Source of the DNA: Octopus bimaculoides
Lineage: Eukaryota
NCBI RefSeq assembly: GCF_001194135.2
Contig: NC_068986.1
Location: 46,320,784 to 46,367,475 of the forward strand
Direction: 5' to 3'
Length of the DNA stretch: 46,692 bases
Below are positions 40 through 25,363 of the stretch, in pieces (position 1 is the stretch's first letter; the number at the start of each line of letters is the position of its first letter). The position numbers and the translations under genes were made by a program. Under the pieces are notes generated by a model. The model worked only from the letters and a program-made list of their open reading frames with translations, did no database searches and was not told the DNA's origin.

Positions 40-46
<7 letters not shown>

Positions 47-323
47 GATAGTCTACTGGTTTCACGTTTTTGCTAATTATGACTGGAAAATTGGTGAAAA
101 TATTACAATCTTGTAGTATTTTCTGGAGTCTTTAGTTCTTGCTTTTGGTATGAGAGTTTGTTTGTAAATAACAAACTGGTTATTTTGCTGGTTTGTTTAC
201 AAACAAACTCTCATACAAAGAACATGGTCTAAAAACTCCATAAAATGCTAGAAAATTGCAACATTTTCACCAATCTTCCAATCATGATTAGCAAAATGTG
301 AAACCGGTAGATTATCATAATAT
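40..323. repeat. Long imperfect inverted repeat (about 140-bp arms, short spacer) with a hammerhead-like motif in each arm
   Basis: 40-179 is the reverse complement of about 187-323 (e.g. attatgatagtctactggtttcac / gtgaaaccggtagattatcataat; gagagtttgtttgtaaa / tttacaaacaaactctc). It abuts the (TA)n tract at the window start. Confidence 0.9.
280..313 (+). ncRNA. Hammerhead-like motif, A3-U8 core variant (right arm of the palindrome)
   Basis: AATC-ATGATTA-GCAAAATGT-GAAAC-CG-GTA|GATT: 4-bp stem I, 3-bp stem II with a G-U closing pair, palindromic ACCGGT stem III. The mirror copy at 50-84 (minus) has stem I AGTC/GACT. Confidence 0.5.
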
Positions 324-894
324 CCTATCTTATAAAATATATTAAAAATATATAAATTGTGGGCATTTTTCTTCTTTTGTTATATAATTTTTCATTATAA
401 CTTACCATGTGGTGAAAATCTCTTCAACAAAATTCTTTACAATATATATATATCTGAAGTGTAGACTATTGTATATCCATCAGGGCTGATCTTACCAATT
501 TGTTTCATGCTATGAGTACAATGGAGTGTTAGGTAACAATCCAGTTATATACCCCTATGCTCATGAGAAGTAGCCGATACATAATTAAATTTGCTGACTG
601 CTCTCTATTGTTGGTGGTGAAGATGATGAAACAAAATGAGTAGGGGATTAAGTTAAGATTTATGTCTCTTGGTACCGAGACATTGCCATTGAGTTGGTTA
701 TGTTGCAAGTCAGTATATATAAACATACAAGCATACATATGTATATATGTGTGTGTGTGTGTAGTATGTATGCATGTATGTGGGCATGAGATGGGGGAAT
801 ACCCTTGCCTAGACATCATGTGGCAGTGAATGAGCATCATTATTATACAAGCGAGGCTATTAATTTCCAGTCTCCTATGAAATTAAAAAATATC

Positions 895-1045
895 TAATTA
901 TGTGAAAATATTAACTTGCTTGGAAACAGGTGAGAGTTGGCAACAGGAAGGATATCTAGCTGTAGAAAAATCTACCTCAACAAATTTCATCTGACCCATG
1001 CAAGCATGAAAAAGTGAACATTAAATGATGACAATGATGATATAC
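895..1045 (+). mobile_element. Older (GAT)n-tailed relative of family B
   Basis: gttggcaacaggaagg..tctagctgtagaaaa...gacccatgcaagcatg..aaagtg.acattaaatgatg. Similar copies at 1495-1725 (-), 10200-10375 (+), 17650-17905 (-), 24905-24975 (+), 25900-26025 (+) and 30670-30780 (-). Confidence 0.65.
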
Positions 1046-2598
1046 ATTATGATGAAATTTTCCAAACACCTTTCCAATTATATTGACATAAAAATGTAAA
1101 CACAAAATGGTACACACATACACATCTGAACACACACATATACATCTCAACACATATACATGCATACACTTTATAAAAATCAGATTAAGTTATTTAAATT
1201 AACTGCTTAGACATTCTGAATACTGAGAAAAATAAGTGCTGAAAGTGAAAAATATGCATTTATTTATTTTTAATAATATTAAACTTATTGCATCTGTTTC
1301 TATTTTTATTTATGTAGTATATTTAAGTTTATTTCTTCAAAGTATATTGTTTTGCCAAACAATTTGTTTTAAGATTACCAAATATAATTATCTAAGAAAA
1401 ATATTGCATTTGTTCATTTGAACATAGAGATGGTACAAAAAATGTATACAAAACAGCCCACCACCACTGTCATCATCATCCTCATTATCATCTTTCTTTT
1501 AATGTTTACTTTTCTTTGCTTGCATGGGTCAGACAGAATTTGCCAAGACACATTTTCTACAACTCAATGCCTTTCCTCTCACTGAATGCGTCCCCTGCTT
1601 CCAAGAAAGGTAATATTTCCCCATTGCCAGGAATATTTTTCATGGAAGACTGGAAATGAATAACCACACTTGTATAACACTGATGATCATTTACAGCCAT
1701 CACATAATATCTAAACAAAAATACACACACACACATACACATGCACACGCACTCATTGTTTCTTTCAATTTCTGTCTACTAAATCCAATTGCAAGGTTTT
1801 GGTTGGCTTGGCCTGAGGCTATATTAAAAAGACACATGCGCAGGGTGTTGCATGATAGAACTGAACCTAACACCACATGATTGAGAAGCCAGATTCTTAA
1901 CCACACAGCCACACATACAGCATATTCAGGAAATAAAAAGCTCTTATAGCAACAATGGAAAATGATTTTGCAGAATATGAATTTGTCAACGAATATCATG
2001 AAAGCAGCCAATATATTCATGGGCTAGAAGTATGTTTGTTGAATGTAATGATCCAAATCTACATTTTAGGTTACATGCATGCATGGCCAACATTCCATAC
2101 AAGACAGTTAAAGCCAACATTTAATTAATACATATTCATTGCATATATTTCACACAATTTATATACATTCACAGCTTACATTTCCTACAGCTCACATTCA
2201 AGACTTATTGTAAGGTAAAAATGAAAAAGCAATACACAAATACATGTTGATTTCAATAATAAAATACTAGGGAAAGTGAAAAGCTAATGGTGAAATATTT
2301 CTAATAGAATAATAATACATAATCCAAACTCAAAAATATCAATACTTGAATCAGTGTACATGAATATAATTGAGAATTAACCACACTATAATTAACTTGA
2401 CAACAAGATATTTGCAAGCAAATTATAAATTATATAATTACATAAAAGCTGAAACACATAAGCTAAACATTTCAGACAAACATCTTGATGCATGCAATAC
2501 AAATAAATTGTTTGAAGTATTTCATCAAAAGCAACAGAACAAGGTTTAATGGAATTAATACATTACCATTACTGCTTTTAATATCAGGAACGTAAAAA

Positions 2599-2625
2599 CC
2601 TTACCTGAAAAATGCAAGAAAATAG
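2599..2625 (-). other. Candidate recursive splice site (polypyrimidine-CAG|GTAAGG)
   Basis: Minus strand ataactattttcttgcatttttcag|gtaagg, junction 2605/2604, on the same strand as the FS/Kazal exon. Confidence 0.35.
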
Positions 2626-2944
2626 TTATATTATTATAAGATATAAGAATACATATATATATAATTTATGTAAATGTAAAAGAAATATGATGAAATGAAA
2701 AGTATACACATACAATTTAAAGATTGATGTTTGCTTTCTAATTTACCTGATAAAATTATTAATCACATGAAGCCAACGAGAAAACCAATAAATATTGATA
2801 GTTGTGTGAACTGCCAGAAACAGAAACCAAATCTCTCTCAAATAACACTATACTGCTACCACCATCACTGCCACCACCACAACCACTGCAACCACCTCCA
2901 CGGCCCAACCACTGCCACCCACTCCATGACCACCACCATGTTTA

Positions 2945-3175
2945 TTTCTTCAAAGTTTTGGCATGGTTTTTACAACTGGATGCCCTTCCTAACACCAACT
3001 ACCCCACAAAGTGGACTGAGTGCTTTTTACATGGCACCAGCATAGGTGAGGTCAATTCTGGCATGAATTTTACAACTGGATGCCCTTTCAAATACCAACC
3101 ACTTTACAGTGTGGACTGAATGCTTTTTTTTATGTGGCACCAGCACTGGCAGGGTCACCAAGTAACTTGCAACAC
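2945..3175 (-). mobile_element. Family-B-related fragment with an internal duplication
   Basis: tttacaactggatgccctt occurs at about 2969 and 3069, reverse-matching aagggcatccagctgtag. Confidence 0.6.
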
Positions 3176-3546
3176 AAGGAATCTTTGAGAGGGAGGGGTC
3201 ATTGGAGGAGGTGATCTTGTATCAAACATTTTGAGATGAACTAGTGTATAACTATAGGACAATCAGTCAGATAAACTAAACCAAAAATAAGACTCACAAA
3301 ACTATGAAGACCAATCTACAAGAGCAATAGTTCTCATTAATAAATAATTCATATTGTAATGATCTGTCAAAATAATGTCAACATTGAAAGCCAATGTAAA
3401 ATGAAAATAACAATGATAATGATAGTGAAATAGCCGAGGAAAAAATTTACAGCTTAAATGAAACTTATTCTAAAGTCTTTGAATAGAAGGTTGCTATTGC
3501 ATTTATTGAATGATAAAACATTTTAGACATTTCAGATGTAAAGTTT

Positions 3547-3605
<59 letters not shown>

Positions 3606-4296
3606 NNNNNNNNNNNNNNNNNNNNNNNNNNNNNNNNNNNNNNNNNNNNNNNNNNNNNNNNNNNNNNNNNNNNNNNNNNNNNNNNNNNNNNNNNNNNNNN
3701 NNNNNNNNNNNNNNNNNNNNNNNNNNNNNNNNNNNNNNNNNNNNNNNNNNNNNNNNNNNNNNNNNNNNNNNNNNNNNNNNNNNNNNNNNNNNNNNNNNNN
3801 NNNNNNNNNNNNNNNNNNNNNNNNNNNNNNNNNNNNNNNNNNNNNNNNNNNNNNNNNNNNNNNNNNNNNNNNNNNNNNNNNNNNNNNNNNNNNNNNNNNN
3901 NNNNNNNNNNNNNNNNNNNNNNNNNNNNNNNNNNNNNNNNNNNNNNNNNNNNNNNNNNNNNNNNNNNNNNNNNNNNNNNNNNNNNNNNNNNNNNNNNNNN
4001 NNNNNNNNNNNNNNNNNNNNNNNNNNNNNNNNNNNNNNNNNNNNNNNNNNNNNNNNNNNNNNNNNNNNNNNNNNNNNNNNNNNNNNNNNNNNNNNNNNNN
4101 NNNNNNNNNNNNNNNNNNNNNNNNNNNNNNNNNNNNNNNNNNNNNNNNNNNNNNNNNNNNNNNNNNNNNNNNNNNNNNNNNNNNNNNNNNNNNNNNNNNN
4201 NNNNNNNNNNNNNNNNNNNNNNNNNNNNNNNNNNNNNNNNNNNNNNNNNNNNNNNNNNNNNNNNNNNNNNNNNNNNNNNNNNNNNNNNNNNNNNNN
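3606..4296. other. Assembly gap (691 N)
   Basis: Run of N. Other gaps: 5645-5772 (128 N) and 18273-18383 (111 N). Confidence 1.
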
Positions 4297-4514
4297 GAGC
4301 GTGGCCGTTTTCGTGCGGGTGACACGTAAAAGCACCCACTACACTCTCTGAGTGGTTGGCGTTAGGAAGGGCATCCAGCTGTAGAAACTCTGCCAAATCA
4401 GACTGGAGCCTGGTGTTGCCATCCGGTTTCACCAGTCCTCAGTCAAATCGTCCAACCCATGCTAGCATGGAAAGCGGACGTTAAACGATGATGATGATGA
4501 TGATGATGATGATG
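4297..4514 (+). mobile_element. (GAT)n-tailed SINE family B, 3' part, next to a gap
   Basis: gttggcgttaggaagggcatccagctgtagaaac...ggacgttaaacgatgatgat; identical to 30250-30451. Confidence 0.85.
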
Positions 4515-4777
4515 ACCACCACCATCATTGTTATCATCATTTTATCATCCACTTACTGGTAATTGCACAGGAAGAGGGAATTCACTGATGCAGATTTGCT
4601 ACATTGAGATGATCTTCCTCTTGCTACTTTTCACTTGTTTTTAAGCATGATAATAATGTTTTCATGGAAGATTTAGAAATGAGCAACATCAGTTGTATGA
4701 TGGTGATTCTTGTTTTACAAATATCATGAGATGTCAAGACAATGATAAACACACATACATACAAATATACACATATA

Positions 4778-4960
4778 CAGGGTGTCCCAAAATTAAAGCA
4801 ACCAGCTGTTTTCAATTTTGCCAAAGCAAAATATTGTTATATTTTGGGTTCAAGGATTGAAATGTGATAGTAAAGGAAACATAGTTATGACACTACCACA
4901 TCTATACATATCTGGAAATGCATGCGTGTTATACAAAGCGTAAAATTACCAATTACATTT
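4778..4960 (+). mobile_element. Orphan left end of a Tc1/mariner-superfamily element
   Basis: TA|cagggtgtcccaaaa is a typical Tc1-type terminus; no matching right TIR was found, and the right boundary is approximate. Confidence 0.35.
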
Positions 4961-6810
4961 TCTGCACTTCTTATTACCTCATAACATGATTTGATGTCTG
5001 TATGCTATCCTGTCCTGTGGTATAATGATTGTTTTTACATTGTGTGGTATATAGGAGTGGAGTGTGTGACTGCTAACGGAGTCCAAATTTCGTAACATGA
5101 TTTTTGTCTTTGAGTAGCAACTGTTATTTCCTATTTGCTTTTTCCTAGAAAATATGAGAAATAGCTCATATTTCCTTCAAACTTTGCTTTTCTTACATTT
5201 ATTCAAACCTCAAAGAGCCCCTCTTGACACATGGCTAGGATGTTTCCCCACTACTGCTCATGATCAGAGATGCACTTATTGTCAGTCACTAAGGGACATG
5301 TTCAAGTGGCTAAGGTCAAGAAACTGACAAGCAAATCTGTGTTATTGAATGGAATATTTGCTATAACGATATTTCTGTTTAAGTAACTCAGCATTGAATC
5401 TGTCTGAAATGTAATGGAAGATAAGTTAGTTTCAAAACATTGATGTCCAGGTCAGAAAAGCAAAGTTTGAAGACAATAGTAGTCATTTCCTTTGATTTCT
5501 AGATAGAAGTAAATAGGAAATAACACTTACTGACCAAAGACAAAAAAAAACAAAATAAAAAATTTTGTTACACAAATCTTCCAGCACACTCAGAATTCAT
5601 ATATATATATATACTTTCATACAAGCATGCATGCATATGTACGTNNNNNNNNNNNNNNNNNNNNNNNNNNNNNNNNNNNNNNNNNNNNNNNNNNNNNNNN
5701 NNNNNNNNNNNNNNNNNNNNNNNNNNNNNNNNNNNNNNNNNNNNNNNNNNNNNNNNNNNNNNNNNNNNNNNNCAATAGTAGTCATTTCCTTTGATTTCTA
5801 GATAGAAGTAAATAGGAAATAACACTTACTGACCAAAGACAAAAAAAAACAAAATAAAAAATTTTGTTACACAAATCTTCCAGCACACTCAGAATTCATA
5901 TATATATATATACTTTCATACAAGCATGCATGCATATGTACGTACATACATATATACATACATGCCTACATTCATGAAAACATAATGGGAGTAAAACTAC
6001 TAGCAGTACAAGAAGTACTTAATTTGTGAAGCAACTTATATTTTGAGCAGAATGATTTATTTCCTTGAGGACTTTAAATGTTATCAATATCCATTCATAA
6101 TAATTACTAGTATTGTGAGGTACTCTATTAGTCAGTCTACACATGCATCACATGCACACACACACTCACCCTCTCTCTCTGACTCCATACAAACTCTTTC
6201 ACTAGAATGCACACATTATTTATGAGGGGGTTTTGTTCGCCATTCAGAAATTTTCTTTTGGCAGTGTTGAAGGTAAAATTTTGAATTTCATTTAGGTGAT
6301 GACTAACTTTGTATAGATCATGGTATTTGACAGTATCTAGAGACACATTGACAGAGGTCAAATTGTCTCAGCAATGACCCACATAGTTATGTATGGCATA
6401 TATTTGTGGCCACAATCTATGCATGCCTACAACCCAGTGATACTATACAAACTATTTAGATTAGTTCATGGTTACCTAGAAAGTGAAGTAAGATTAGGTA
6501 GGTTGGTCAAAGTAATTGATACTTTCCTTTGACCTACTAACTTTTTCCATGTATCCTCCCACATGCATTTACTTACACACACATCAACATATTCTCTCTC
6601 TCTCCCTCACACACACACACACACACAGATATATAAATGTGTACTGTACACATTCAGACAAAATTAATGCCTTGTATAACTAGATATACATATTCTTCTA
6701 TACATAGATGTATATCAATTATACTAAAGATTATTTTTTTGTTCAAAATTGCAACTTCACTCTAATGCTATGCTGATGTTCCCTCATTCTATCATTTTAG
6801 TATGTTAATC

Positions 6811-6847
<37 letters not shown>

Positions 6848-6848
6848 A

Positions 6849-8540
6849 TAGAAATATGTTACAAAAAGAAAATAGAAACTACACGTGGAAATGTAAGGGG
6901 AAAGTAAGAAGAAAAAATAAGCGAAAATGCACATTGAAAATCAAAAAAAGTAAAGGCATTTTATGAAAAGTAACGATACATATATACAATTAGATGAACT
7001 GAGGTAGGAATAAAAGTAATAAAAGTCATTATTGTGAATTGTTAAATAGATTCAAAAGCATACCGGTTTCGTAAAATTACTGATCACTGCTTTGAATGTG
7101 CACCAGTTACCGAATGATGTCAGGTCTACTAGTCCCTGAGTAAAAAAGGTTATGTGTAAGGGAGGTAAGTAGTACTGGATTTGGTGCAATTAGGGTAGAT
7201 ATAATTCTGTAATGTGAATGATGTAGGGGTGGTATTAATTGAAAGGTTAGTAGTGTTCTGCATTAAGTTATGTGTTCATATTGAGTTGTGGTAGATATTT
7301 ATTGATGAAAGTTGCCTCTTTAATCATTCTTTGTTGTACTGAGGTGTTCTGTGAACATTGATAGAAGGGAAAATGAGGAAATTAGGATTAAGGTTCCTAG
7401 CACACATTTCTATGTGTTCACTGATCTGTATCTGTCTGTATTGTGGGTGGCGGATTTGTTTATTGTGGAGAGTGGTTCTTCAACGGAGTAATATTCCTGT
7501 TTGGCCAATATAAGGATTATCATACCCTAAACATGTAATGGCATAGATTAGATTTTCTGAGGCACAGGTGAAATTTGATTTAACCTTGTTTAAAGTGGAA
7601 CTCTGAACCCTCCAAAAGGTGGGGGCATGTACCACAGTTAGGTCAACCACAATTTTTCACTTTTGGTTCTGTTGTTAATGGATATAGTCTTGCACTGGTT
7701 AATATTTTTTTCAATGATTTAGATTGCATTTTGCTTTTGATAATTTTGTGTGAGCCTAAAATTTTGTTCATTGTTTTATTCTTCTGTGAGGATGGGTAAA
7801 TTTTGGATGATAATGTTGAAGGAGATGTATGGGAGTATTTTTAAGTCTGGTGTAGTATTTCAGTTGATTTCCCTTGATGTTCGTATATCTATTTCCTTAG
7901 CTCATTTAATGCCATCATTTATTAATGATATTGGGTAATGTCTTTTGATTAGTATTGATCTAAGTTCAAGGAGTCTTCATTCATGAGTATAGGTATCCAA
8001 AACTATGGTACAGATTCTTTTCGCTAGATTATAAGGTATATTAATTTTTATGTGTTTGGGGTGGCATGAGTAGAATAATAGGTATTGTTTAGAATCTGTG
8101 GGTTTATAGAAAATGTCTGTTTGATGTGGTTATTGACTATTTTAATTAGGATGTCAAGAAAAGGGAGTTGTTTACTGCTGTGCTCCATGGTGAATTGTAT
8201 GTTGCTATTAATATTGTTAAGCGTTATTTTGAAATCGAGGAGTTTGTCCATGCTGTTTTTTCAAAGTATAAAGCAATTGTCCAAATACCTCTTCAAGTTC
8301 TCCTTTAAATAGCAATGAAATGAGGTGCCATATTTTTGTAGTGATAATTGGTATATTTTAAGTTCTAGGTAACACATTACAAGGTTTGCAATTCCACGTT
8401 TTTGTTGAAAGTAAGCTGTATTGAACATGAAATAGTTGTTCAGTAGGATGAATTTGAGTGCTGCAATTATGAATCTGTGATTGATGCGTCCTATATATAC
8501 CTAACCAGGGAATGCCAAGATTCTTTTGGCCACTCTGAAG
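6849..8540 (-). mobile_element. Penelope-like retroelement (PLE), 5'-truncated and degenerate: RT C-terminus, GIY-YIG endonuclease and 3' pLTR region
   Basis: Minus-strand translation gives ILLNNYFMFN..QQKRGIA, RYLDNCF (RT YxDD motif, 8276-8290), LNNINSNIQFTMEHSSKQLPFLDILI, then NLIYAITC...YIGQTG (GIY-YIG, about 7495-7554), ending at TAA near 7268. In-frame stops and frameshifts are present. The 3' end abuts a (TA)n tract. Confidence 0.85.
7050..7097 (-). ncRNA. Minimal type-I hammerhead ribozyme motif with G3-C8 core variant
   Basis: Minus strand: ATTCAAAGCA-GTGATCA-GTAATTTTAC-GAAAC-CG-GTA|TGCTTTTGAAT. Stem I is 10 bp with one bulge, stem II is GTA/TAC, stem III is the palindrome ACCGGT. 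It lies about 170 nt after the PLE stop codon. Confidence 0.75.
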
Positions 8541-9480
8541 CAAACCTTTTCTCCTTCATTATCTTTGCAGCTGTTACACCAAACCTCTCCAACCATGCAA
8601 CAAATATTTTGCTTTAGTACTTGATGAAAATTTAATCTTTGCTTTCAAGTGAAGTCTTTCTCTCATATGTTGTTGCTATATTTGTAAAGAATTTTCTGCT
8701 TTCTTATTCAGTTTTTAAATCACTGTTCAACTGTTATTCCTATGTCCAAAGTAATGGGAGTCTAAATACAAATCCATGATATCTTACCTCTAAGAGAGAC
8801 ATAACCATCCTCGTGTCTCAAATGATTCTCTTAGTACATCATACATTAGTTTCTTTCTCTAATATTGCCCTTCAGTAGCACTAAGCAATGAAGACCTCCT
8901 TAGTCAGAAGATCATGGCAATGGCATAAAATCAAGACAGTACCATGAGATCAGGAAATTCCCTTAATATTGCAATATAGTCTTGGAATATGAGTGCTGCC
9001 TTCAAACCTCTTTGCCCTTTCCAGTCATTAGTACCATTCAGATGTTTGGATTTCAGCTTCCTTTAGTTTAAGCTGTAGTGTTTTTTCTCATCCCCCTTGT
9101 AGAAACAGGCTATAACAATGTGGATTCTCATTGTAATAGCACTACTGTAGTGTTGTTTCAGGACATTAGAATTGATATTCAAGACTGGAATAAGATACTA
9201 GGAATACTCAGTAAGGAAAGACTTGAATGCTTTCAAGACATGTTCATGCTCAACAACAGTTTCCTTGTACCAATATCTTCAATACTACCTATGGGCAATG
9301 GCTTTCTGAGTCCTACTGCTTTAGTCACTCACTCTTACTCTCCAAGAAGATGAATTTCTTTTATGACAATATCTTGCCTACCTTTGTTATTTTTGGCAGG
9401 ATATCCATTTTTTTACTGTATTGACCCCAATCCAGTACTGCATCACAACTCTCACCTCTTCTGTTTCAGAGAAGTCTCTG
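8541..9480 (-). mobile_element. Degenerate RTE-type LINE ORF2 (RT) remnant
   Basis: Frame-broken minus-strand peptides resemble VDLEKAFD (HVLKAFKS, about 9225-9250), GVHQGSVL (SHGTVL) and LHGSETW (YLLHGW). Heavily decayed. Confidence 0.45.
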
Positions 9481-12121: not shown

Positions 12122-12392
12122 TCACTGGACTGGCTCCTGTGCACGTGGCATGTAAAAAACACCATTTGAGCGTGGCCATTGCCAGTACCGCCTGACTGGC
12201 CCTCGTGCTGGTGGCATGTAAAAATAACCACTACACTCTTAGAGTGGTTGGCGTTAGGAAGGGCATCCAACTGTAGAAACTCTGCCAGATCAGATTGAAG
12301 CCTGGTGCAGCCATCTGGCTTGCCAGTCCTCAGTCAAACCGTCCAACTCTTACCAGCATGGAAAGTGGACGTTAAATGATGATGATGATGAT
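12122..12392 (+). mobile_element. SINE family B
   Basis: Same body and (GAT)n tail as the other family B copies. Confidence 0.85.
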
Positions 12393-13559
12393 ATATATAT
12401 ATATATATAAACTTGATGTTTGATAAACATTCCACAGAATGTAAATACTTTGAGCAAGGAGAGGATAAAGCTTTAACTTGAGAAGCTAAGTTTTAGCTTT
12501 GTGTGTGTAGTAGAGTGATCTCAGTGTACATACGTAATTTTCTATGTTAAAAAAGTTAAGTTTTTGCTAAGATATTTAGGTTAAATTCTGAAATGATATC
12601 AATGCTTTTCAATGAATGCAAGGACTGTCGTTAAGTATTTTCAGTTGTTTAATATATTTATCAACATCTCTTTATTACTATGGTAACAAGGAACTAACTA
12701 TCATTGAAATGGCTTTCTTGTATATGTGCAGATTTCACAAAAGATAACATATTTGGCAATTATATAAGCTGATGATTATTTGCTTTGTATCAACAGGCTC
12801 ATAAATATTGCAGTAAGTTTTAGTGAAGTTCAGCTGTGCTTTTTCATCCTTGATATGTGTGACTTAACTGTAAGTAAACCTGGAATTTTGATAAGATCAA
12901 AAGCACTCATATTGTAAACAGGGAAAGTTTTCCTTTGTTCACAGTAACTGGCTAACCCTTTTAAATATTGATATTATTTTGTTTGTTTGTTCTTCCTAAA
13001 TTTCATAAATTATTAAAAGGGTGGAGAGTATTCAGAATGAAAACGAAAACAACTCATTCTGTAACTTTTGCTGTTCTTTAGTCACTCAGCAAAAATTTTC
13101 TCACAAAGAATTTTCCTTAATATCACTTCAAATGTCAAAGTCATTTTCATTCTTAGAGCAACAGATATAGATTTCATGTTGGAGTACTATATGATAAAAC
13201 ATCAATAAAACTAAGATAAATCAGAATCTAAAAGAAGTTAAATAAGATTTTCTTGTTATTAGACATTATAAGCATCAATTTGAGACAGAATAGAGCATCA
13301 AAACCAAATGTTTTTTTTGTTTAATGTTCTGTTCTTGCTTTTTGCTTTTTGTCTCAAGTTGATACTTATATCATTTTCATTAAAATCTTAGCAGTGTAAT
13401 TGTAAGATTTGCTAGAGGTAAATACATTCAAACTTTTTTAGAGAATGGTAAATCAATAACATAAAGTTGGATTTAAGCAAAAATAAAGTTTGCTTTGAAT
13501 AGAATTTCACAAACTATACTCCTTAACTAATAGCCAGTTATTGACATTAGATCTTAGCA

Positions 13560-15087: not shown

Positions 15088-15148
<61 letters not shown>

Positions 15149-16563: not shown

Positions 16564-16570
16564 TAAAACT

Positions 16571-16728
16571 CGGTGGCATAGCTGAGGGAATTGGGGAAAA
16601 GGGATGGTTTGCCCCTGATGACACTTTTATGAGGGAAGCACTTTTGGGTCTGCAATATGAGCCTGTATAGGGTGGATGGGTAGAGCAGGGCAAACTCAAG
16701 GGCTGCATATACACTAGCTAAATCACTG
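16571..16728. mobile_element. hAT-type MITE (158 bp)
   Basis: Imperfect TIRs cggtggcatagctga / ctagctaaatcactg; 8-bp target duplication gtaaaact (16563-70) / ataaaact (16729-36), 7 of 8 identical. Confidence 0.6.
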
Positions 16729-16974
16729 ATAAAACTCCACTAGAAAAAATTAAGGTCAATCCAAAATGTGGTGCATGATACAAGAGGAAAACCATGTCTA
16801 CTCTTTATGAGACTATGAATGATGCTTTATATTGGCCATACAAAAATAGTTTTTAGCTGTGATTGAACATTTGTGATTAAGAGTTTATCTTGAAGTACTT
16901 CACCTTAAGGCAATATTTTATCTTAAGACACTTCAAGATATTAAGATATTTCAACTTCAGATAATATATCAAAG

Positions 16975-17015
<41 letters not shown>

Positions 17016-17935: not shown

Positions 17936-18245
17936 TGTAGGTGCATGACTAAGTGGTTAAGAGTGTCAGGCTTACAGTCATGAGGTAGTGAGTTTCATTC
18001 CCAGACTAGGCTGTGTGCTGTGTTCTTGAGCAAGATACTTTATTCTTATGCTACTCTAGTTGCGATGTCACTGGTGCCAATGAGTTGCGATGTCACTGGT
18101 GCCAAACAGTATTGACCTTTGCTTTCCCTTGGATTGCATCAGTGGCATGGGCAGGGGAGGCTGGTATGCATGGGTGACTACTGGTCTACCATAAACAACA
18201 TTGCCCAAACTTGTACCTCAGAGGGGAACTTTCTAGGTACATCAT
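17936..18245 (+). mobile_element. Second tRNA-head SINE type
   Basis: gactaagtggttaag (A-box-like), gagtttcattccc (B-box-like), gtgttcttgagcaagatact segment; internal tandem duplication of agttgcgatgtcactggtgccaa. Confidence 0.6.
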
Positions 18246-18388
18246 GGTATATATATATATATATATATATATNNNNNNNNNNNNNNNNNNNNNNNNNNNN
18301 NNNNNNNNNNNNNNNNNNNNNNNNNNNNNNNNNNNNNNNNNNNNNNNNNNNNNNNNNNNNNNNNNNNNNNNNNNNNNNNNNNNATATA

Positions 18389-19131
18389 TTAGGTTGTTTC
18401 ATATGAAATGTCACATCTTTAATTACTTGTTATTTCAGTCATTTAAAAACTCAATTGTGTATACCTTGCATTTAAACTTAACTCTTTATCTTTCCCAACA
18501 ATATTGGTATACAAAATTCGTACCCACAGACCTTATGAAAATGATAACAACCAAACTATATTGAGTGATTTTCTCATATGAGTACAAACTGGGTCACTCT
18601 GCTGCAGAAGCTTTGGCAATGGTTTTGTTGACATCAGAACTGTTCAGAGATGGTTCTAAAGCTCTCATTCAGGAGATGATAGCCTTGAAAATAAACCAAG
18701 GAGTAGGCCAAAATCAGTTATTCAGCAGGACGGATTAAATGCTTTGGTTGAACAAAATCTGAAAACAAAGGTTTGCAAACTTTCATCAGAACTCCAAACA
18801 TGTCGCACAACTGTTTTTGGATACCTGTAAAAAATTGGAAAAGTCTAGAAAACGGATAGGTTTATTCTACATCAACTGAACAAGATAAAAAAAAAACAGA
18901 CGTCTTGAAGTGTGCTCCTTATTGCTTTCTTGACTGGAAAAAGGACTATTTTTGCATCAAATCATTACTTGTAATGAGAAATGGATACTCTTTGACAATA
19001 GCAGAACAGGACAGTGATTAGATGCAGAAGAGTCACCTAAACACTACCCAAACCCACCATTGTACCCTAAAAAGTTAGTGGTCACTGTATGGTGGTCTTT
19101 CAAATATGACATTTCATGGGAAACAACCTAA
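18389..19131 (+). mobile_element. Internally deleted mariner element (743 bp)
   Basis: TIRs ttaggttgtttcatatgaaatgtcacat / atatgacatttcatgggaaacaacctaa. Remnants WILFDN and PKPPLYPKKLVVTVWW run straight into the right TIR. Confidence 0.85.
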
Positions 19132-19379
19132 TGTATGTATGTATACATACATACATTTGTTTATCTGCACAATTGTCTCCATATCTGCTCACCTGGATTC
19201 CACTTATAGTCATGATTTGCCCTGCGGAACTGGTCCCATGTAAAGATATTGGAGAAGTTTGAATAATTTGAGTGCTACTAAGTATTTTTTTATACCAAGA
19301 ATGTCTGGATCTCATCTGTTGCCTCTCTCTCTCTCTCTCCCTCTTTATATATACACACACCACACACATATACAACATA

Positions 19380-19541
19380 GACTTCTTTCAGATTCCACTA
19401 CATTCTACTAAATCCACTCACAAAGCTTTGGTCAACTCAGTGTTATAGTAGAAAACACTTGCCCAAAGTGCCATGCAAGGAGACTGAACCCAAGACCATA
19501 TTGGTGAGAAGCAAGCTTCTTAACTATACAGCCATAACTGC
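19380..19541 (-). mobile_element. SINE family A, 5' half
   Basis: aaatccactcacaaagctttggtc...cacttgcccaaagtgcc...gactgaaccc. Similar 5' halves lie at 1770-1920 (-), 20780-20945 (-), 22610-22770 (+) and 25400-25570 (+). Confidence 0.7.
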
Positions 19542-20352
19542 AACTATGAACAACTTCAAATCTATGTTTGCAGTTATTCATAGCCAATATATTACAAACA
19601 TTTTTAATAAAAGTAACAAACTATCTAATATATATTAGATGTCTACAAACATCCAGTTTGAATAAGCCTACTGATAACAAATTATGAGCATCATCCCATC
19701 ACCCTGCAATAATCATATATATGATAAACTTGATAAGGCTCTCTCATATCAACTTGAGAGCTTTCCTATCTCTCCTACTCTTTTTCACCTTTATACAAAC
19801 AAATGATTTTGAGGAAATAGAGATAAAGACCAGCAAAATTTTCCTCAAACTACATCCTCACCCTGTTAATATGAAAAATAAGACAGGAGATATTATAGAT
19901 CAAGGTATACATTATTCATGAAAAACAAAAAGGAAAAGAACCAAATCAAAGCAAAATATTAAACATGACAAGCAGCCCATGGATCAAATTCCTTTGATCA
20001 TTGACTGATCTGTTCAATCAAAAATGATTTAGTGGTTGGCTAAATAACATCAAACTACTTGCTGTCACCTCTAATGACATATTCATCCTTAGGCAATGAC
20101 ATTAATACTTCACCATCTTTCAACACAACACTCTCTTCCAGGTATAATCATTTTGCAAAATGCAGAAACGTTGAGAACACACTGCAATGAGATGTCAACT
20201 TAGCCCTTCTCAAAAACATCTAAAACACAAAAAATACAATTAATCATAAGAGAATAAGCCTTCAAAACTACACACAACTGATGAACACACTATTAAAGCC
20301 ATCATACTTTCTAAAGATGTTACATCCAAGACAATGGTACAGTTGCTACACC

Positions 20353-20481
20353 CTACACTACAGTACAGATGCTAGGTCCTAAACTTCAGTACAGATGCTG
20401 ATTCTACACTATAGTACAGGTGCTAGGTTCTACACTACAATACAGATACTAGATCCTATATTATAATTCAAATGCATAGTT
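20353..20481 (+). repeat. Minisatellite, about five copies of a 25-26 bp unit
   Basis: Consensus ctacactacagtacagatgctaggt(c/t), contiguous with no spacers. Confidence 0.85.
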
Positions 20482-22761
20482 CAAGAAAACTAGTTTGGGC
20501 AAATATGGAGTGGAAAGGGTAGGTTGATTGTATGGACAACTACTAGTCTTTCTCAAAAACTCTTGTCTCAACTTGCACATATATTTGCAGATGCATGATC
20601 AGTAGTGATTGATGGAAGCCTAAAAGACTGAAAGGTTAAATTTTTCCAAAGTTATGCTCCTCTTAGAGAAATTTTTATGTACATAACAAGATATTTGTAC
20701 AAATTTACAGTTTACACAAATACATGTGAACAACACATATACACATGAGCATGCACACAAACACATCTATTTATATGATTGGATTCCACACAGTTTTAGT
20801 TTCACAAATTTCATACATAGGACATTGGTGAACCCAAGGCAATGCTAAATGATGCTTGCATAAGGTGCCACACAGTCGAATCAAACCTGGAGAACCAAAT
20901 TGTTGTGAAACAAACTTCTTATCCATACAGCCATGCCTGCATCATATGTCAGATGTAATAAAAATAAGACTGAATATTAACAAAACAAAACTTGTAATTT
21001 TTTTGAAGATTTCACACAAGAATTTGGATTTCTTATGCAAATCCTTTGTTGTTATTTTTTTAAAAGCAAAATAAGACATGCTAATTAGACATGCTAATTA
21101 GATTACACCATTCAAAAGCTGTCAAGTCTTTATATTAGAAGAAATATAGAAAGAAAAAGCTAACTACAGTTCTGATAGACAGATTTTTTTAAAGCCAAAT
21201 GGATTAGATTCCTGCTGGTGACAAATTAGTTAATAATATTAGAAATGATGACAGCTAAAGATGGTGATTCATAGTTTTAGACATTGTCTACTGTATCATG
21301 ATAGTGGTCAAATGCATAATGGGAGAAAATTTATAATATTGGTTTTCTTCAAAATAGATCTCAGTGTTTGACAAAATTTCAGAGATTGCAAGCATTCTTC
21401 ATTCATATACTTTTAGAAAATTCTGACAAATCAATTTCAAGGTTTTCTCTTGTTGTTGATTAGCTCTAGTTAACCCTGTTCAACTAGATCTATTACCAAA
21501 GTCATTCCAAATGAAACTAGTCTATCTTTTTAGAGATATGTAAGAGCATATTATTTAATGTATCCCTTCATTATTTAAGTAGGTAGTGTGAAGTTTGACA
21601 ACAGTTTGGTTGCTATTTCTTATAGACTGATAGACTACATAGAGTCCCTCATCCCACCTCACTGAACAGAATGGGAGAATGTATCGATGATTGTAAGTGT
21701 GACAAGGTGCAATAAACAAAGCTTTGATTATACATGGGAAAATATGAATTAAAAACATCATGAGTAAACATTGGGATGCATTACATGCTATAATCAGACA
21801 TTCTGATCTAATGTATAATGATTAGTTGAGTAGTATTGCTTTTTAGACAAAGAGAAAACCAATAAAAACAAATAAGTATTCTTGATAAGAAAATTATGGA
21901 AATTATCTAAAAAGTATCACCATCACTATCATTTATGTTTCATATCCAGCAGTAGCCATCATTAGGGATTTTGTTTTGTTCTCTTTTTAAATATTATAAC
22001 ACTGCATTGTATTAACAAGAGAAATTTGCAACAGTGACCACTTTCATTTCCTAATTGCATTAGAGACAGTAGATTATTTACTATGAAATTATAACTGGGT
22101 TGGCAAATTAAATACCTTTCCAATCTATTTACTTATTCAAATAAGAAAGATAAAATGGCCAGACAGTCAACAATTACTACATGTAAAGTCAAGAACAAGA
22201 TAGTTTGGATCTACAGATTTATTTATTGATTGATTGAGCTGAATGTGTTGAACACATTGTCATTGTAAAAGACAGAAGTTATTCTCCTGTGATGCACACT
22301 AGAGTGACCAATACACTTTGTGTCTGAACTTGGTTGGATGTATCACAAATAAATATGCAAATGAGTTCCTGGTCTCATTGCACATGGTACAAATAACGAT
22401 ATGTTATTTCTATATTTTCATAAAAAGAACTTGTGCATTTTCAACAGTATTAAGCTATAAATTTGATTTTTGAAAAAAGGAGTGAATAAATAAATCCACT
22501 GGGTAAAATAAAGGCATTTAGGATCATACCATCAAAGCTAATCTTAATCATGAATGTTAAAGAATTGAAATTGAAAAACACAAAGAAAAAGCTTGAATGA
22601 TTAGTGCAGTAATGGGTGTGTGGTTCAACAGTTTACTTCCTGACCAAATGCTTTCATTATTCAGTCCCAATGCATGGTACCTAGGACAAGTGTCTCCTAT
22701 TGTCATTCCAGGTTGACCAAAGCGTTGTGAGTGGATTTGGTGAATAGGATATGAAATAAGA

Positions 22762-22798
<37 letters not shown>

Positions 22799-22801
<3 letters not shown>

Positions 22802-23129
22802 CCCAGCTTCGCCTTCCTGGCACTTGTAAAGACATTCGAGCGAGATCGTTGCCAGTGCTGCTGGACTGGCTCCTGTGCAGGTGGCACATAAAATACACCA
22901 TTTTGAGTGTGGCCATTGCCAGTACTGCCTGACTGGCCTTTGTGCCGGTGGCATGTAAAAGCACCCACTACACTCTCAGAGTGGTTGGCATTAGGAAGGG
23001 CATCCAGCTGTAGAAACTCTGCCAAATCAGATTGGAGCCTGGTATAGCCATCTGGTTCACCAGTCCTCAGTCAAATCGTCCAACCCATGCTAGCATGGAA
23101 AGCGGATGCTAAACGACGATGATGATGAT
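22799..23129 (+). mobile_element. SINE family B
   Basis: Two gccagt...actggc subunits, family body and (GAT)n tail, followed directly by the Tc1 insertion. Confidence 0.85.
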
Positions 23130-23132
23130 ATA

Positions 23133-24409
23133 CAGGTGCTGGACAAAATAATGGAAACAACCAACTAGCATCATAGCATCGTAATTTTTAATATCTATAA
23201 AACCATCAAAAGATTGTTTATTTTCATGTTTCTTGATTTATTATTAGTGTTGCTTAATATGTTTTGCTAAAATTGCTGTTTCTTTCCCAATATCATCATA
23301 AAAAGGTAATTTAGATTCATTAAAATGAAAGATCTATTGAACTTTCAAACAGGTAAAATTGTTGGTGCTCATATGGTAGGCACTAACGTAATGAAAACAG
23401 CTGAAATGTGTAGTAAGGAGTACAGTCTCAAAAGTATAGACAGCCTTTGAGAAAGAGGGGAAAAGCTCCTTGTTGAAACAGAACACCGGAAGAAAACCAA
23501 AACTTTCAGATAGGGACCATCGGATTCTTACACGAATTGTTGCAAAAGGATTACAAAAGTACAGCTCCCAAAATTACTGGAGAGCTTAATGACCACCTCA
23601 AGAACTCAGTTTCCACAAAAAGTGCTTGTTGAGAGCTGTACAAAGCTAGATTTCATGAGAGAGCTGCAATCAGAAAACCACAACTTTCAAAAACAAAAGC
23701 TGCAAAGTGTTTGGAGTGTTGTAAAAGCCTACAGAATTGGTCCCTAGAGCAGTGGAAGAATGTTATTTTCTTCGACAAGTCATCCTTTACCTTATTTCTG
23801 CTCACCGGCCAAGTATACATGTAGAGACAGCCAAAAGAAGCATCTGACCCAGACTGCCTACTTCCAACTATTAAACATGGAGGAGGATCTGTGATGATCT
23901 AAGGGGGGGGGGGGCTATATCTTGGAAATTCACTGGCGCAATGGCTTCCCTTTGTGGTAGAATTAATAATCAAGACTTATTTAAGCATTTTATCTAATCA
24001 AACTCATCCTATGGTTGTGTAACTATTTCTGGAGAGAAATGCAATCTTTCAGGATGATAATGCACCAATTCACACAGCTAAAGTTGTTAATGAATGGCAT
24101 AAGGAACATTCTAGTGAAGTTGGAGATCTTATCTGGCCACCACAGTCCCCAGATCTCAATATTATCGAACATTTATGGTGCATTTTAGAAAAACAAAGAG
24201 TCGATATCCTCCACCATCATTACTACAAGAACTGGAGACTATTCTAGCTGAAGAATGGACAAAAATTCCTTTGGAAACAATTCAAACATTGTACAACTCC
24301 ACACCTTGTAGAATTCAAGCTGTAATTACTGCCAAAGGTGATCCTACTCTATGTTAAAATTAATTTGTTTGAAATTTTAAAGTATTTCCATTATTTTGTC
24401 CAACCCCTG
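23133..24409 (+). mobile_element. Full-length Tc1-family DNA transposon (1277 bp), defective copy
   Basis: TIRs caggtgctggacaaaataatggaaac and gtatttccattattttgtccaacccctg; TA on both flanks (23131-32, 24410-11); encloses a transposase pseudogene. Confidence 0.92.
23325..24357 (+). pseudogene. Tc1-like transposase pseudogene with DD36E spacing
   Basis: Starts MKDLLNFQTGKIVGAHMVG; contains VIFFDKSSF, FQDDNAPIHTAK and WPPQSPDLNIIEHLW; frameshifts and stops elsewhere. Confidence 0.85.
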
Positions 24410-24415
24410 TATATA

Positions 24416-24482
<67 letters not shown>

Positions 24483-24484
24483 TA

Positions 24485-24883
24485 GATGCAGGAGTGGCTG
24501 TGTGGTAAGAAGCTTGCTTCCCATCCACATAGTTTTGGATTCGATCCCACTGCATGGCACCTTGGGTAAGTATTTTCTACTATAGCCTAGGGCCAACCAA
24601 AGCCTTGTGAGTGGATTTGGTAGATGGAATCTGAAAGAAGCCTGTTGTATATATGTATGTATATGTAAATGTTTGTGTGTTTGTGTTTGTCCCCCCCACC
24701 ATCACTTGACAATCAATGTTGGTGTGTTTATGTTCCCGTAACTTAGTGGTTCAGCAAAAGAGACCGATAGAATAAGTGCTAGGCTTCCAGAGAATAAGTC
24801 CTGGGGTCAATTTGTTCCACTAAAGGCAGTGCTCCAGCATGGCCTCAGTCAAAATGACTGAAACAAGTAAAAGAATAAAAGAG
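24485..24883 (+). mobile_element. tRNA-head SINE family A, full length
   Basis: Pol III A-box-like gtggctgtgtgg and B-box-like ggattcgatccc, central (TA/TG) microsatellite, 3' half ending gactgaaacaagtaaaaga; many homologous copies in the window. Confidence 0.85.
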
Positions 24884-25169
24884 AAAAAAAAAAAATATAT
24901 ATATATAAAATCTGCCACAATAAACTCCATCTGGCTTATGCAAGCATGGAAAAGAGGGCATTGAAATGTTGATGATGATAATATTAATATAGAAATGACT
25001 GAACTCATGCATTGACAACAGACAAAAGAATGTATCTGCAATTTTCAGACTACGATTTCATTGCAGTATTGAACATTGTAATGAAAGTAGAGTATTGTAG
25101 TTCGCTTGAAGCATTGTGTATTGTTTGTAAAGAATAAAACGTTTAGAATGGTACAGCAAGGCACTATAA

Positions 25170-25363
25170 AACAAAAAATGGACTATATACCTGTTATAAT
25201 TTGGTTATCTATAGTTCTATGATATTTCGGAATTACAATTCCTTCTTCAGATTTTCTTTGCTAGAGTCTCCAGCAAAGAAGATCTGAAGAAGGAATTGTA
25301 ATTCCGAAATATCATAGGACTATAGATAACCAAATTACAACAGGTATATAGTCCATTTTTGTT
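25170..25363. repeat. Near-perfect inverted repeat (about 93-bp arms, 9-nt spacer) with a hammerhead core in each arm
   Basis: 25170-25262 versus 25272-25363: 3 mismatches and one indel in a poly-A run; spacer agagtctcc. Confidence 0.95.
25281..25316 (+). ncRNA. Minimal hammerhead motif with canonical CUGAAGA core (mirror copy at about 25218-25253, minus)
   Basis: GAT-CTGAAGA-A-GGAAT(TGTA)ATTCC-GAA-ATAT-C|ATA. All core nucleotides are present, stem II is 5 bp, stem III is the 4-nt palindrome ATAT, but only 2 bp of stem I are evident. Confidence 0.55.

What the first reader, a model, noticed from the sequence alone, without database searches (positions are those of the whole stretch)
40..25363. 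Natural covariation of the hammerhead catalytic 3-8 pair (G-C, A-U, C-G) across retroelement-derived loci within 25 kb
Seen: three separate loci carry minimal hammerhead architecture (N3-TGA-N-N8-A, stem II, GAAA, palindromic stem III, NUH site). The cores read GTGATCA (7081-7087, minus), ATGATTA (284-290) and CTGAAGA (25284-25290). Positions 3 and 8 change together and always stay Watson-Crick complementary; the two variant loci also share GAAACCGGTA. Established: C3-G8 is a tertiary pair needed for catalysis and compensatory swaps can rescue activity; PLEs carry minimal hammerheads that cleave as dimers through a palindromic stem III. Inference: PLE/retrozyme lineages in this genome keep non-canonical but functional cores that a CUGANGA-based search would miss.
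Basis: partly seen in the sequence, partly recalled or inferred. Interest (0 to 1): 0.85.

Follow-up and report, generated by a model that had tools for sequence, protein, structure and literature searches.

The report
Retroelement hammerhead relics, swapped core pair
Three short relics of Penelope-like jumping genes in what is probably an octopus-type genome carry the small self-cutting hammerhead RNA motif, and two of them have a rare swapped version of one key base pair, which modestly extends a pattern already described.

Summary
All three loci resemble the minimal hammerheads (HHR) of Penelope-like elements (PLEs).

I built covariance models only from PLE hammerheads of other organisms. 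In the window they find:
- locus 2 (7052-7096, minus): 35.4 bits, E 2e-7
- locus 1 (275-318): 21.8 bits, E 1e-3
- locus 3 (both arms, about 20.5 bits, E 2-3e-3)

Background stops at 12 bits.

Locus 2 lies 181 nt downstream of a decayed, 5'-truncated RT/GIY-YIG ORF (8551-7277, minus). Canonical hammerheads sit at that position in related PLEs. Loci 1 and 3 are head-to-head foldbacks with no ORF nearby. This fits the inverted 5'-truncated copies typical of PLEs, but it is an inference.

Positions 3-8 read G-C, A-U and C-G as claimed. Among 36 other PLE hammerheads I found C-G 23, U-A 10, U.G 1 and 2 mismatches, with no G-C or A-U. Both arms of locus 1 share A3/U8, so that state predates the arms' divergence.

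Limits:
- all copies are relics
- no same-family copies could be fetched
- activity is untested
- natural 3-8 covariation (U3-A8) in PLE hammerheads was published in 2011 and 2014
- the C3G/G8C double mutant is known to cleave partially

Verdict: a real but modest new variant of a known kind.

The parts
7052..7096 (-). Locus 2: PLE-type minimal hammerhead with G3-C8. Helix I 7097-7088 with 7060-7051; core GUGAUCA 7087-7081; helix II hairpin 7080-7071; GAAA 7070-7067; palindrome ACCGGU 7067-7062; A17 at 7061. Predicted cleavage between 7061 and 7060.
   Evidence: Model R1 gives 35.4 bits, E 1.8e-7. Cofold predicts the intermolecular ACCGGU helix.
7277..8551 (-). Decayed, 5'-truncated PLE ORF covering the C-terminal two thirds of the RT and the GIY-YIG endonuclease. 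It has three frame changes and at least two in-frame stops.
   Evidence: Six-frame reading. tblastn with P0001 and other homologs. The homologs carry RVT_1, HTH_animal and GIY-YIG.
6848..7276 (-). 3' untranslated / pLTR part of that PLE. It holds the hammerhead 181 nt after the end of ORF homology and ends at a (TA)n run.
6816..6847 (.). (TA)n microsatellite abutting the 3' end of the PLE. (TA)n is the preferred PLE target.
   Evidence: Craig 2021, PMC8557442.
40..323 (.). Locus 1 foldback. Two arms of about 140 nt lie head to head, 84-90% complementary. I read them as two 5'-truncated PLE 3' ends in inverted orientation.
   Evidence: Folds at -149.8 kcal/mol, z -25. Arm alignment.
275..318 (+). 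Locus 1, right arm: hammerhead with A3-U8. Helix I 280-283 with 310-313; core AUGAUUA 284-290; helix II 291-299; GAAA 300-303; ACCGGU 303-308; A17 at 309.
   Evidence: R1 gives 21.8 bits, E 1.2e-3.
45..89 (-). Locus 1, left arm: decayed twin. Core AUAAUUA at 80-74 (G5 changed to A, but A3 and U8 kept); GAAACCAGUA at 63-54 (palindrome broken at the CpG).
   Evidence: R1 gives only 8.8 bits.
1..43 (.). (TA)n run abutting the left end of the locus 1 foldback. It is cut by the window edge.
25174..25360 (.). Locus 3 foldback. Two 93-nt arms, 96% complementary, 1 nt apart.
   Evidence: Folds at -138.5 kcal/mol, z -27.6.
25275..25319 (+). Locus 3, right arm: class-2 PLE minimal hammerhead with canonical C3-G8. 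Core 25284-25290; bulged A 25291; helix II 25292-25305; GAAA 25306-25309; AUAU 25309-25312; C17 at 25313. Helix I is only 2 bp.
   Evidence: R2 gives 20.2 bits, E 3.4e-3.
25215..25259 (-). Locus 3, left arm: the same motif on the other strand, core at 25250-25244.
   Evidence: R2 gives 20.9 bits, E 2.2e-3. Also.

Best explanation
All three loci are relics of Penelope-like retrotransposon (PLE) 3' ends. Each carries the minimal type-I hammerhead that PLEs hold near their 3' end.

How it works in a live element (from the literature, not shown here):
- Helix III is one A-U pair closing a self-complementary loop, ACCGGU in loci 1 and 2 and AUAU in locus 3.
- A single copy is therefore unstable. 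Two copies in one transcript, or in two transcripts, pair through the palindrome and form two active sites.
- Each site cuts after position 17. PLE hammerhead cleavage is weak and protein-assisted.

What each locus is:
- Locus 2 sits 181 nt downstream of a frameshifted, 5'-truncated RT/GIY-YIG ORF, and the element ends in (TA)n.
- Loci 1 and 3 are pairs of very short 5'-truncated copies joined head to head. This is a typical PLE insertion product.

The 3-8 pair:
- The parent elements of loci 1 and 2 belonged to the GAAACCGGUA hammerhead class.
- They already carried a purine3-pyrimidine8 pair (A-U, G-C) instead of C3-G8, while the other ten fixed core positions were intact.
- This points to selection for 3-8 pairing, and hence probably for residual cleavage, in those lineages. 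G-C and A-U interconvert by transitions through G.U.

Shown: motif homology, position next to the ORF, the pairing pattern, and the relic state.
Inferred: a PLE origin for loci 1 and 3, the variant pair being ancestral, and activity.
The copies in this window are very probably inert today.
For: PLE context of locus 2:
- PLE ORF remnant at 8551-7277. Homologs carry RVT_1, GIY-YIG and HTH_animal and are named from Octopus, Argonauta, Crassostrea and Mytilus.
- Canonical hammerheads lie about 100-110 nt after the ORF stop in the related loci L002 and L004, and 50-570 nt after the ORF end in the metagenome PLE loci.

The hammerhead class:
- Other PLEs carry CUGAWGA, a G..C helix II and GAAACCGGUH (L008, L009, L020, L047 and others).
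- Model R1 was trained on 21 such sequences, none from the window. It finds locus 2 (E 1.8e-7) and locus 1 (E 1.2e-3) and nothing else above 12 bits.
- Model R2 finds both arms of locus 3.
- In more than 320 kb of other PLE loci, every hit of 20 bits or more with either model lies downstream of an ORF or in an inverted partner copy.

The 3-8 pair:
- Over 38 distinct sequences: CG 23, UA 10, GC 1, AU 1, UG 1, mismatch 2. Permutation P<1e-5.
- Both arms of locus 1 have A3 and U8, although they differ at G5/A5, CCGG/CCAG and elsewhere.

PLE biology:
- (TA)n abuts locus 1 and the locus 2 element, as it does in L002, L004 and L087.
- 5' truncation, adjacent inverted truncated copies, (TA)n targets and a hammerhead near the 3' end are described in PMC8557442.
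- Dimer cleavage is described in PMC4209133 and PMC6765202.
- The C3G/G8C double mutant partly restores cleavage in a PLE hammerhead (PMC11167929).
- Cofold predicts the intermolecular ACCGGU helix for loci 1 and 2.
Against: - No second copy of either variant family could be obtained, so a family consensus is unknown.
- None of 36 other PLE hammerheads, including four from Octopus bimaculoides and Argonauta, has G-C or A-U.
- There is no PLE ORF near loci 1 or 3.
- Helix I is only 4 bp in locus 1 and 2 bp in locus 3.
- Locus 3 has no (TA)n flank.
- E-values of about 1e-3 come from briefly calibrated models and may be off several-fold.
- Local folding energies are no better than shuffles (z +0.1 to +0.8).
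- Any transcript through loci 1 or 3 would fold into a long hairpin.
- L087 has an intact ORF but A3.G8, and L045 has C3.U8. So position 3 or 8 can drift singly in apparently live elements.
- Hammerhead cleavage is dispensable for PLE insertion in vitro, which weakens the argument for selection.
Confidence: 0.65

Rival explanations
1. The variant 3-8 pairs are private changes that arose after insertion in dead copies. The families have canonical CUGANGA cores, and the Watson-Crick look is coincidence.
For: - All copies are relics.
- G-C and A-U are absent from 36 other PLE hammerheads.
- Single 3 or 8 mismatches do occur (L087, L045).
- The arms of locus 1 show 10-16% decay since insertion, including a core hit at G5.
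Against: - Both arms of locus 1 share A3 and U8, so that state predates the arms' divergence.
- For locus 2, two specific transversions at exactly positions 3 and 8 are needed, with the other ten fixed core positions untouched. The ORF lesions (three frameshifts, two stops in 1.27 kb) suggest roughly 2-14% neutral divergence. That gives about 1e-4 to 2e-3 for the double change. This is my rough estimate, not a tool result.
- Two independent double changes that both end up paired are much less likely still.
Confidence: 0.15
2. Only locus 2 is a PLE hammerhead. Loci 1 and 3 are foldback or MITE-like DNA elements unrelated to PLEs, and their hammerhead-like strings are chance matches.
For: - No RT/EN remnant lies near either locus.
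- They are near-perfect hairpins.
- Helix I is weak.
- Model E-values are only about 1e-3 and roughly calibrated.
- The loose descriptor expects 0.3-0.8 chance hits per window when 3-8 is free.
Against: - Locus 1 shares the exact decamer GAAACCGGTA with locus 2. From base composition I estimate about 0.04 exact matches expected in the window; two are observed.
- Its G.U-closed, AAA-looped helix II resembles that of L020.
- Locus 3 matches the class-2 PLE pattern (CUGARGA, bulged A, helix II, GAAAUAUH) seen in L049 and L055. The chance rate with C3-G8 is 0.01 per window.
- Neither model gives an off-target hit of 20 bits or more in over 320 kb of other loci.
- Outward-facing motifs in head-to-head arms mirror L002 and L089.
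- Locus 1 abuts (TA)n.
Confidence: 0.15
3. The motifs are PLE-derived and the variant pairs were in the parent elements, but these cores are catalytically dead. The motif is retained as a structural or RT-recognition element of the PLE 3' end, or simply hitch-hikes.
For: - Hammerhead catalytic mutants do not affect PLE insertion in vitro, and cleavage is weak and protein-dependent (PMC11167929).
- PLE hammerheads cleave poorly even as dimers (PMC4209133).
- Naiad PLEs thrive without hammerheads (PMC8557442).
- For locus 2, cofold prefers an alternative GUGA/UUAC pairing that uses G3.
Against: - A purely structural role would not explain why U4, G5, A6, A9, G12-A14, A15.1-U16.1 and H17 stay fixed while 3 and 8 change together.
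- C3G/G8C retains partial cleavage.
- Covarying 3-8 variants are active in vitro, as cited in PMC3088659.
Confidence: 0.3

Closest known systems
Minimal hammerheads of Penelope-like elements, including the U3-A8 core variant (Cervera & de la Pena 2014, PMC4209133; dimer cleavage also Lunse et al. 2017, which I could not read)
   Same: - Type-I topology.
- Helix III reduced to A15.1-U16.1 with a palindromic loop, or to palindromic 15.2-16.2.
- Location in the pLTR / 3' region after the RT-EN ORF.
- Single, dual and opposite-strand copies.
- 3-8 covariation.
   Different: The pair here is G3-C8 or A3-U8, with a purine at 3 and a pyrimidine at 8. This orientation was not found in the text of that paper, in 36 other PLE hammerheads sampled here, or in my literature searches. 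Helix II is short (3 bp), without the extra nucleotide after A9 in loci 1 and 2.
Engineered C3G/G8C double mutant of the hammerhead (Martick & Scott 2006, as cited; tested in the Anolis Poseidon PLE hammerhead, PMC11167929)
   Same: Locus 2 has exactly this swap. The literature shows that each single change kills cleavage and the double change partly restores it.
   Different: The double mutant is a laboratory construct. Locus 2 is a natural genomic copy from a different PLE and a different hammerhead class. Its activity is untested.
Natural U3-A8 hammerheads outside PLEs (Perreault et al. 2011, PMC3088659)
   Same: A compensatory change at the tertiary 3-8 pair seen in natural sequences.
   Different: These keep a pyrimidine at 3 and a purine at 8, an orientation reachable from C-G by transitions through U.G. 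They are mostly bacterial or phage and have a full helix III.
Metazoan non-LTR retrozymes (tandem hammerhead repeats, proposed PLE derivatives; bioRxiv 10.64898/2026.07.22.740005)
   Same: Short non-autonomous sequences with a type-I hammerhead related to PLE pLTRs.
   Different: Retrozymes are direct tandem arrays that allow dimer cleavage and circularisation. Loci 1 and 3 are inverted pairs, and locus 2 is a single copy. No tandem array is present in the window.

Membership tests
Hammerhead ribozyme (type I, minimal PLE form) | Invariant core U4 G5 A6, A9, G12 A13 A14, A15.1-U16.1, H17 | tested here: met
   Present in locus 2, locus 1 (right arm) and locus 3 (both arms). The left arm of locus 1 has G5 changed to A.
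Hammerhead ribozyme (type I, minimal PLE form) | C3-G8 tertiary pair | tested here: inconclusive
   Canonical in locus 3. Replaced by G-C (locus 2) and A-U (locus 1). Pairing is kept but base identity is not. The swap is known to be partly active.
Hammerhead ribozyme (type I, minimal PLE form) | Helices I and II flanking the core | tested here: inconclusive
   Locus 2: helix I 6 bp, bulge, 4 bp; helix II 3 bp with G10.1-C11.1. Locus 1: helix I 4 bp; helix II 3 bp with G.U. Locus 3: helix II 5 bp; helix I only 2 bp.
Hammerhead ribozyme (type I, minimal PLE form) | Short palindromic helix III or loop allowing a dimer | tested here: met
   ACCGGU in loci 1 and 2, AUAU in locus 3. The intermolecular ACCGGU helix is predicted by cofold.
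Hammerhead ribozyme (type I, minimal PLE form) | Match to a curated Rfam hammerhead model | tested here: not met
   No hit at the gathering threshold or at E<=10. The test is uninformative, because Rfam also misses canonical PLE hammerheads in nine control loci apart from one 24-bit hit.
Hammerhead ribozyme (type I, minimal PLE form) | Site-specific self-cleavage after position 17 | not testable with these tools
   Needs in vitro transcription and cleavage assays.
Penelope-like element | RT plus C-terminal GIY-YIG endonuclease ORF next to the motif | tested here: inconclusive
   Met for locus 2: 8551-7277, decayed. Not met for loci 1 and 3: no tblastn hit elsewhere in the window.
Penelope-like element | Hammerhead in the pLTR / 3' region, downstream of the ORF on the same strand | tested here: met
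   Locus 2 lies 181 nt after the end of ORF homology, the same place as in L002, L004 and about 30 metagenome PLE loci.
Penelope-like element | Insertion signatures: 5' truncation, adjacent inverted truncated copy, (TA)n target | tested here: inconclusive
   Locus 2 is 5'-truncated and ends at (TA)n. Locus 1 is a head-to-head pair abutting (TA)n. Locus 3 is a head-to-head pair with no microsatellite flank. The criteria come from PMC8557442.
Non-LTR retrozyme | Direct tandem repeats of a hammerhead-bearing unit | tested here: not met
   No direct repeat of any of the three loci in the window.
MITE / foldback DNA transposon (considered for loci 1 and 3) | Multi-copy family with terminal inverted repeats and target-site duplication | not testable with these tools
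   No other copy in the window or in 325 kb of fetched loci. The source genome is not searchable at nucleotide level here.

The most novel reading that the evidence does not exclude
A cephalopod PLE lineage runs its hammerhead on a flipped tertiary pair, with a purine at 3 and a pyrimidine at 8. The pair is kept by selection and has already exchanged G-C for A-U through G.U. This would be a natural, active hammerhead clade that every CUGANGA or UUGANAA descriptor misses. It would also be a natural counterpart of the C3G/G8C rescue experiment.
Probability: 0.4. Interest if true: 0.55.

Novelty: new variant of a known kind. Interest (0 to 1): 0.42.

Why it matters
- If the G3-C8 and A3-U8 cores are family-level and active, all four Watson-Crick pairs are tolerated in nature at the 3-8 tertiary contact. 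That is the contact that positions the general-acid ribose.
- It would give natural test cases for the 2006 structural model.
- PLE and retrozyme censuses built on fixed core strings would be shown to undercount hammerheads, at least in cephalopods.
- A practical by-product: Rfam models miss even canonical PLE minimal hammerheads. Small class-specific models with 3-8 treated as a pair recover them cleanly.
- The gain is incremental. 3-8 covariation in PLE hammerheads and partial activity of the swap are already published, and the role of hammerhead cleavage in PLE transposition remains unclear.

Tried and rejected
- Rfam (gathering threshold; E<=10 on the whole window; E<=10 on stretches of about 130 nt): no hammerhead hit. 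I first read this as evidence against the finding. I then showed that Rfam also misses canonical PLE hammerheads, so I dropped that argument.
- I first dismissed locus 3 as a chance string inside a palindrome, because my first descriptor and model R1 reject it. I reversed this after the class-2 descriptor, the simulation and model R2.
- I first treated locus 1 as a MITE. I revised this after seeing the PLE head-to-head architecture in L002 and L089 and the (TA)n flank.
- blastn between the three loci, and of their flanks against 89 fetched loci: no similarity outside the PLE coding region.
- Search for copies of the locus 2 family. The best protein relatives are only 50-61% identical. Their contigs end too early (L001, L088) or carry a different motif (L087 has A3.G8; L002 and L004 are canonical).
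- Octopod loci (O. bimaculoides L003 and L006; Argonauta L005 and L089) have U-A, U-A, C-G and a core with an extra U. None has G-C or A-U.
- Thermodynamic z-scores of the local motifs are not significant.
- Lunse et al. 2017 (PMC5785218) is not held. No supplements are held for Cervera 2014.
- Literature searches for natural G3-C8 or A3-U8 found nothing.

Full report
OBSERVATION

ATGATTA is at 284-290 (+), GTGATCA at 7087-7081 (-) and CTGAAGA at 25284-25290 (+). GAAACCGGTA follows the first two.

None of the motifs or their host elements touches an assembly gap. Gaps 1 and 3 lie inside (TA)n runs. Gap 2 is flanked by an identical 171-nt stretch (5474-5644 = 5773-5943) and is probably an un-merged overlap. 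Only the distances between the loci are uncertain.

FIRST PASS AND WHY I REVERSED IT

Rfam finds no hammerhead at any threshold. Loci 1 and 3 are arms of long foldbacks:
- 40-323 folds at -149.8 kcal/mol, z -25.
- 25174-25360 folds at -138.5 kcal/mol, z -27.6.

The three loci share no detectable similarity, and there is no long ORF nearby. That looked like motif-picking. Three later results overturned this reading.

1. Locus 2 sits in a Penelope-like element.
- Six-frame reading of the minus strand upstream of locus 2 shows RT motifs (..RYLDNCFIL....FTME..LPFLD....KPTDSKQYLLFYSCHPKH..). It also shows a GIY-YIG endonuclease (..NLIYAITCLGYDNPYIGQTG..).
- A stitched query finds 145 homologs with RVT_1, HTH_animal and GIY-YIG domains. 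Some are named from Octopus bimaculoides, Argonauta hians, Crassostrea and Mytilus.
- tblastn maps them to 8551-7277 (-) only. There are three frame changes and at least two stops, and roughly the first 180 codons are missing.
- The motif begins 181 nt after the end of ORF homology, and the element ends at a (TA)n run (6816-6847).
- In related PLE loci the same position holds canonical minimal hammerheads. L002 has CUGAAGA-UCAAUGGA-GAAACAUGUA with an 11-bp helix I, plus an identical inverted copy. L004 has CUGAAGA-GCUCAGC-GAAACGCGUU.

2. A wider sample of PLE hammerheads.
- One metagenome scan with a PLE protein alignment returned 80 PLE loci.
- With positions 3 and 8 left free, descriptor hits downstream of the ORFs fall into two classes.
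- Class 1 has a 6-nt palindrome, very often GAAACCGGUH with a G..C or U..U closed helix II. Examples are L008, L009, L020, L047, L033, L015 and L043.
- Class 2 has CUGARGA or UUGAUAA, a bulged A, a 4-6 bp helix II, GAAA and a 4-nt palindrome (AUAU or ACGU). Examples are L049, L055, L063, L075 and L051.
- Loci 1 and 2 fit class 1. Locus 3 fits class 2.

3. Models trained without the window.
- R1 was built from 21 class-1 sequences, with 3-8 and the palindrome written as pairs. In the window it scores locus 2 at 35.4 bits (E 1.8e-7) and locus 1 at 21.8 bits (E 1.2e-3). Everything else is at or below 12 bits.
- R2 was built from 7 class-2 sequences. It scores the two arms of locus 3 at 20.9 and 20.2 bits (E 2-3e-3), with the next hit at 12 bits.
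- On more than 320 kb of other PLE loci, every hit of 20 bits or more lies downstream of an ORF or in an inverted partner copy.
- Rfam detects almost none of nine canonical control loci, so its silence on the window means nothing.
- Simple simulations agree. The strict descriptor expects 0.20 Watson-Crick hits per window, and two are seen (P 0.02). The class-2 descriptor with C3-G8 expects 0.01.

WHAT LOCI 1 AND 3 ARE

No RT/EN remnant lies near them. Each is a head-to-head pair of short arms (about 140 nt and 93 nt), with the motif near the outer end of each arm and pointing outward.

PLE insertions are known for three things: heavy 5' truncation, an inverted truncated copy placed next to the unit, and a preference for (TA)n targets (PMC8557442). 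L002 and L089 show the same outward-facing inverted arrangement with longer arms. Locus 1 abuts (TA)n at 1-43. Locus 3 has no microsatellite flank.

I therefore read both as PLE 3'-end pairs. This is an inference. A MITE with a chance motif is the rival.

THE 3-8 PAIR

Across 38 distinct sequences aligned to R1 the pair reads C-G 23, U-A 10, U.G 1, A.G 1 (L087), C.U 1 (L045), G-C 1 (locus 2) and A-U 1 (locus 1). Thirty-five are Watson-Crick, with permutation P<1e-5 with or without the window. Pairing at 3-8 is clearly constrained in PLE hammerheads. The window supplies the only purine3-pyrimidine8 cases.

Are they private decay?
- For locus 1, no. The two arms have diverged by 10-16%, including G5/A5 and CCGG/CCAG, yet both carry A3 and U8.
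- For locus 2 there is one copy. The ORF lesions suggest a few per cent to perhaps 14% neutral divergence. Two specific transversions at exactly positions 3 and 8, with ten other fixed positions untouched, would then be a 1e-4 to 2e-3 event. This is my estimate, not a tool result.
- G-C and A-U interconvert by transitions through G.U, just as C-G and U-A do through U.G (seen in L085). Loci 1 and 2 also share GAAACCGGUA with A17. A common flipped ancestor is therefore plausible, but it is not shown.

FUNCTION

Nothing here shows cleavage.
- Local folds are no more stable than shuffles.
- Cofold does predict the intermolecular ACCGGU helix. For locus 2 it also predicts a competing GUGA/UUAC pairing.
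- Published work shows that C3G or G8C alone abolishes cleavage in a PLE hammerhead and that the double change partly restores it. The same work shows that cleavage needs the PLE protein and is not required for insertion in vitro (PMC11167929).
- PLE hammerheads cleave weakly and as dimers (PMC4209133 and PMC6765202).
- The window copies are inert relics. They are truncated and frameshifted, lack a same-strand partner, or are locked in hairpins.

COMPARISON WITH WHAT IS KNOWN

Natural C3-G8 to U3-A8 covariation was described in 2011 (PMC3088659). It was described in PLE hammerheads in 2014, with about 1,300 U3-A8 hits in Schistosoma (PMC4209133).

I found no report of natural G3-C8 or A3-U8. 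However, I could not read Lunse et al. 2017 or any supplements.

Source organism: dispersed repeats in the window match only the octopod loci, at 68-89%. The window is therefore probably from a cephalopod related to those species but not identical to them.

VERDICT

The finding is a new variant of a known kind and rests on two relic copies. The decisive test is a family-level census in the source genome, followed by cleavage assays.

Noticed in passing
window 5474-5644 and 5773-5943 (flanking gap 5645-5772): The 171 nt before the gap are 100% identical to the 171 nt after it. This looks like an overlap the scaffolder failed to merge, so the gap and one copy are probably artefacts.
   Followed up: partly
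window 4297-4498 and 30250-30451: The 202 nt directly after gap 3606-4296 are 100% identical to a SINE-like repeat copy 26 kb away. Other copies of that repeat are 62-88% identical. This may be a mis-join or gap-filling artefact.
   Followed up: no
window 40927-41008, 25557-25633, 28130-28265, 5895-5963 and others: Rfam 'microRNA' matches (mir-3149, mir-1277, mir-297, mir-466) with E down to 1e-10 are TA/TG microsatellites. All are far below the gathering scores.
   Followed up: yes
window 22608-23132, 24488-24853, 31669-32074, 35592-35944, 36447-36697, 43139-43447, 12154-12395: Several dispersed SINE-like repeat families occur in both orientations, 62-92% identical to each other. They match Octopus bimaculoides and Argonauta hians loci at 68-89% and nothing else fetched, so the window is probably octopod-like.
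   Followed up: partly
L087:1744-1791: The second-closest PLE relative, with an intact 478-aa ORF, carries AUGAAGA..GAAACCGGUU. That is an A3.G8 mismatch with a poor helix II, so position 3 can drift singly in an apparently live element.
   Followed up: partly
L005:7248-7547 and 12831-13130 (Argonauta hians): 100% identical 300-nt direct pLTRs flank a PLE ORF, so the insertion is young. Their hammerhead-like motif reads CUUGAUGA..GAAACUAGUC, with an extra U in the core.
   Followed up: no
L002:2155-3033 with 3788-4671; L004:5034-5190; L087:~1880-1900: PLE 3' ends in other organisms also run into (TA)n. L002 is a 99% identical head-to-head pair with outward-facing canonical hammerheads.
   Followed up: partly
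window 276-283 and 310-316 versus 87-81 and 53-47: The two arms of the locus 1 foldback differ by a compensatory pair in helix I: G-C in the left arm and A-U in the right. This could mean the arms come from two different source copies rather than from one insertion event.
   Followed up: no
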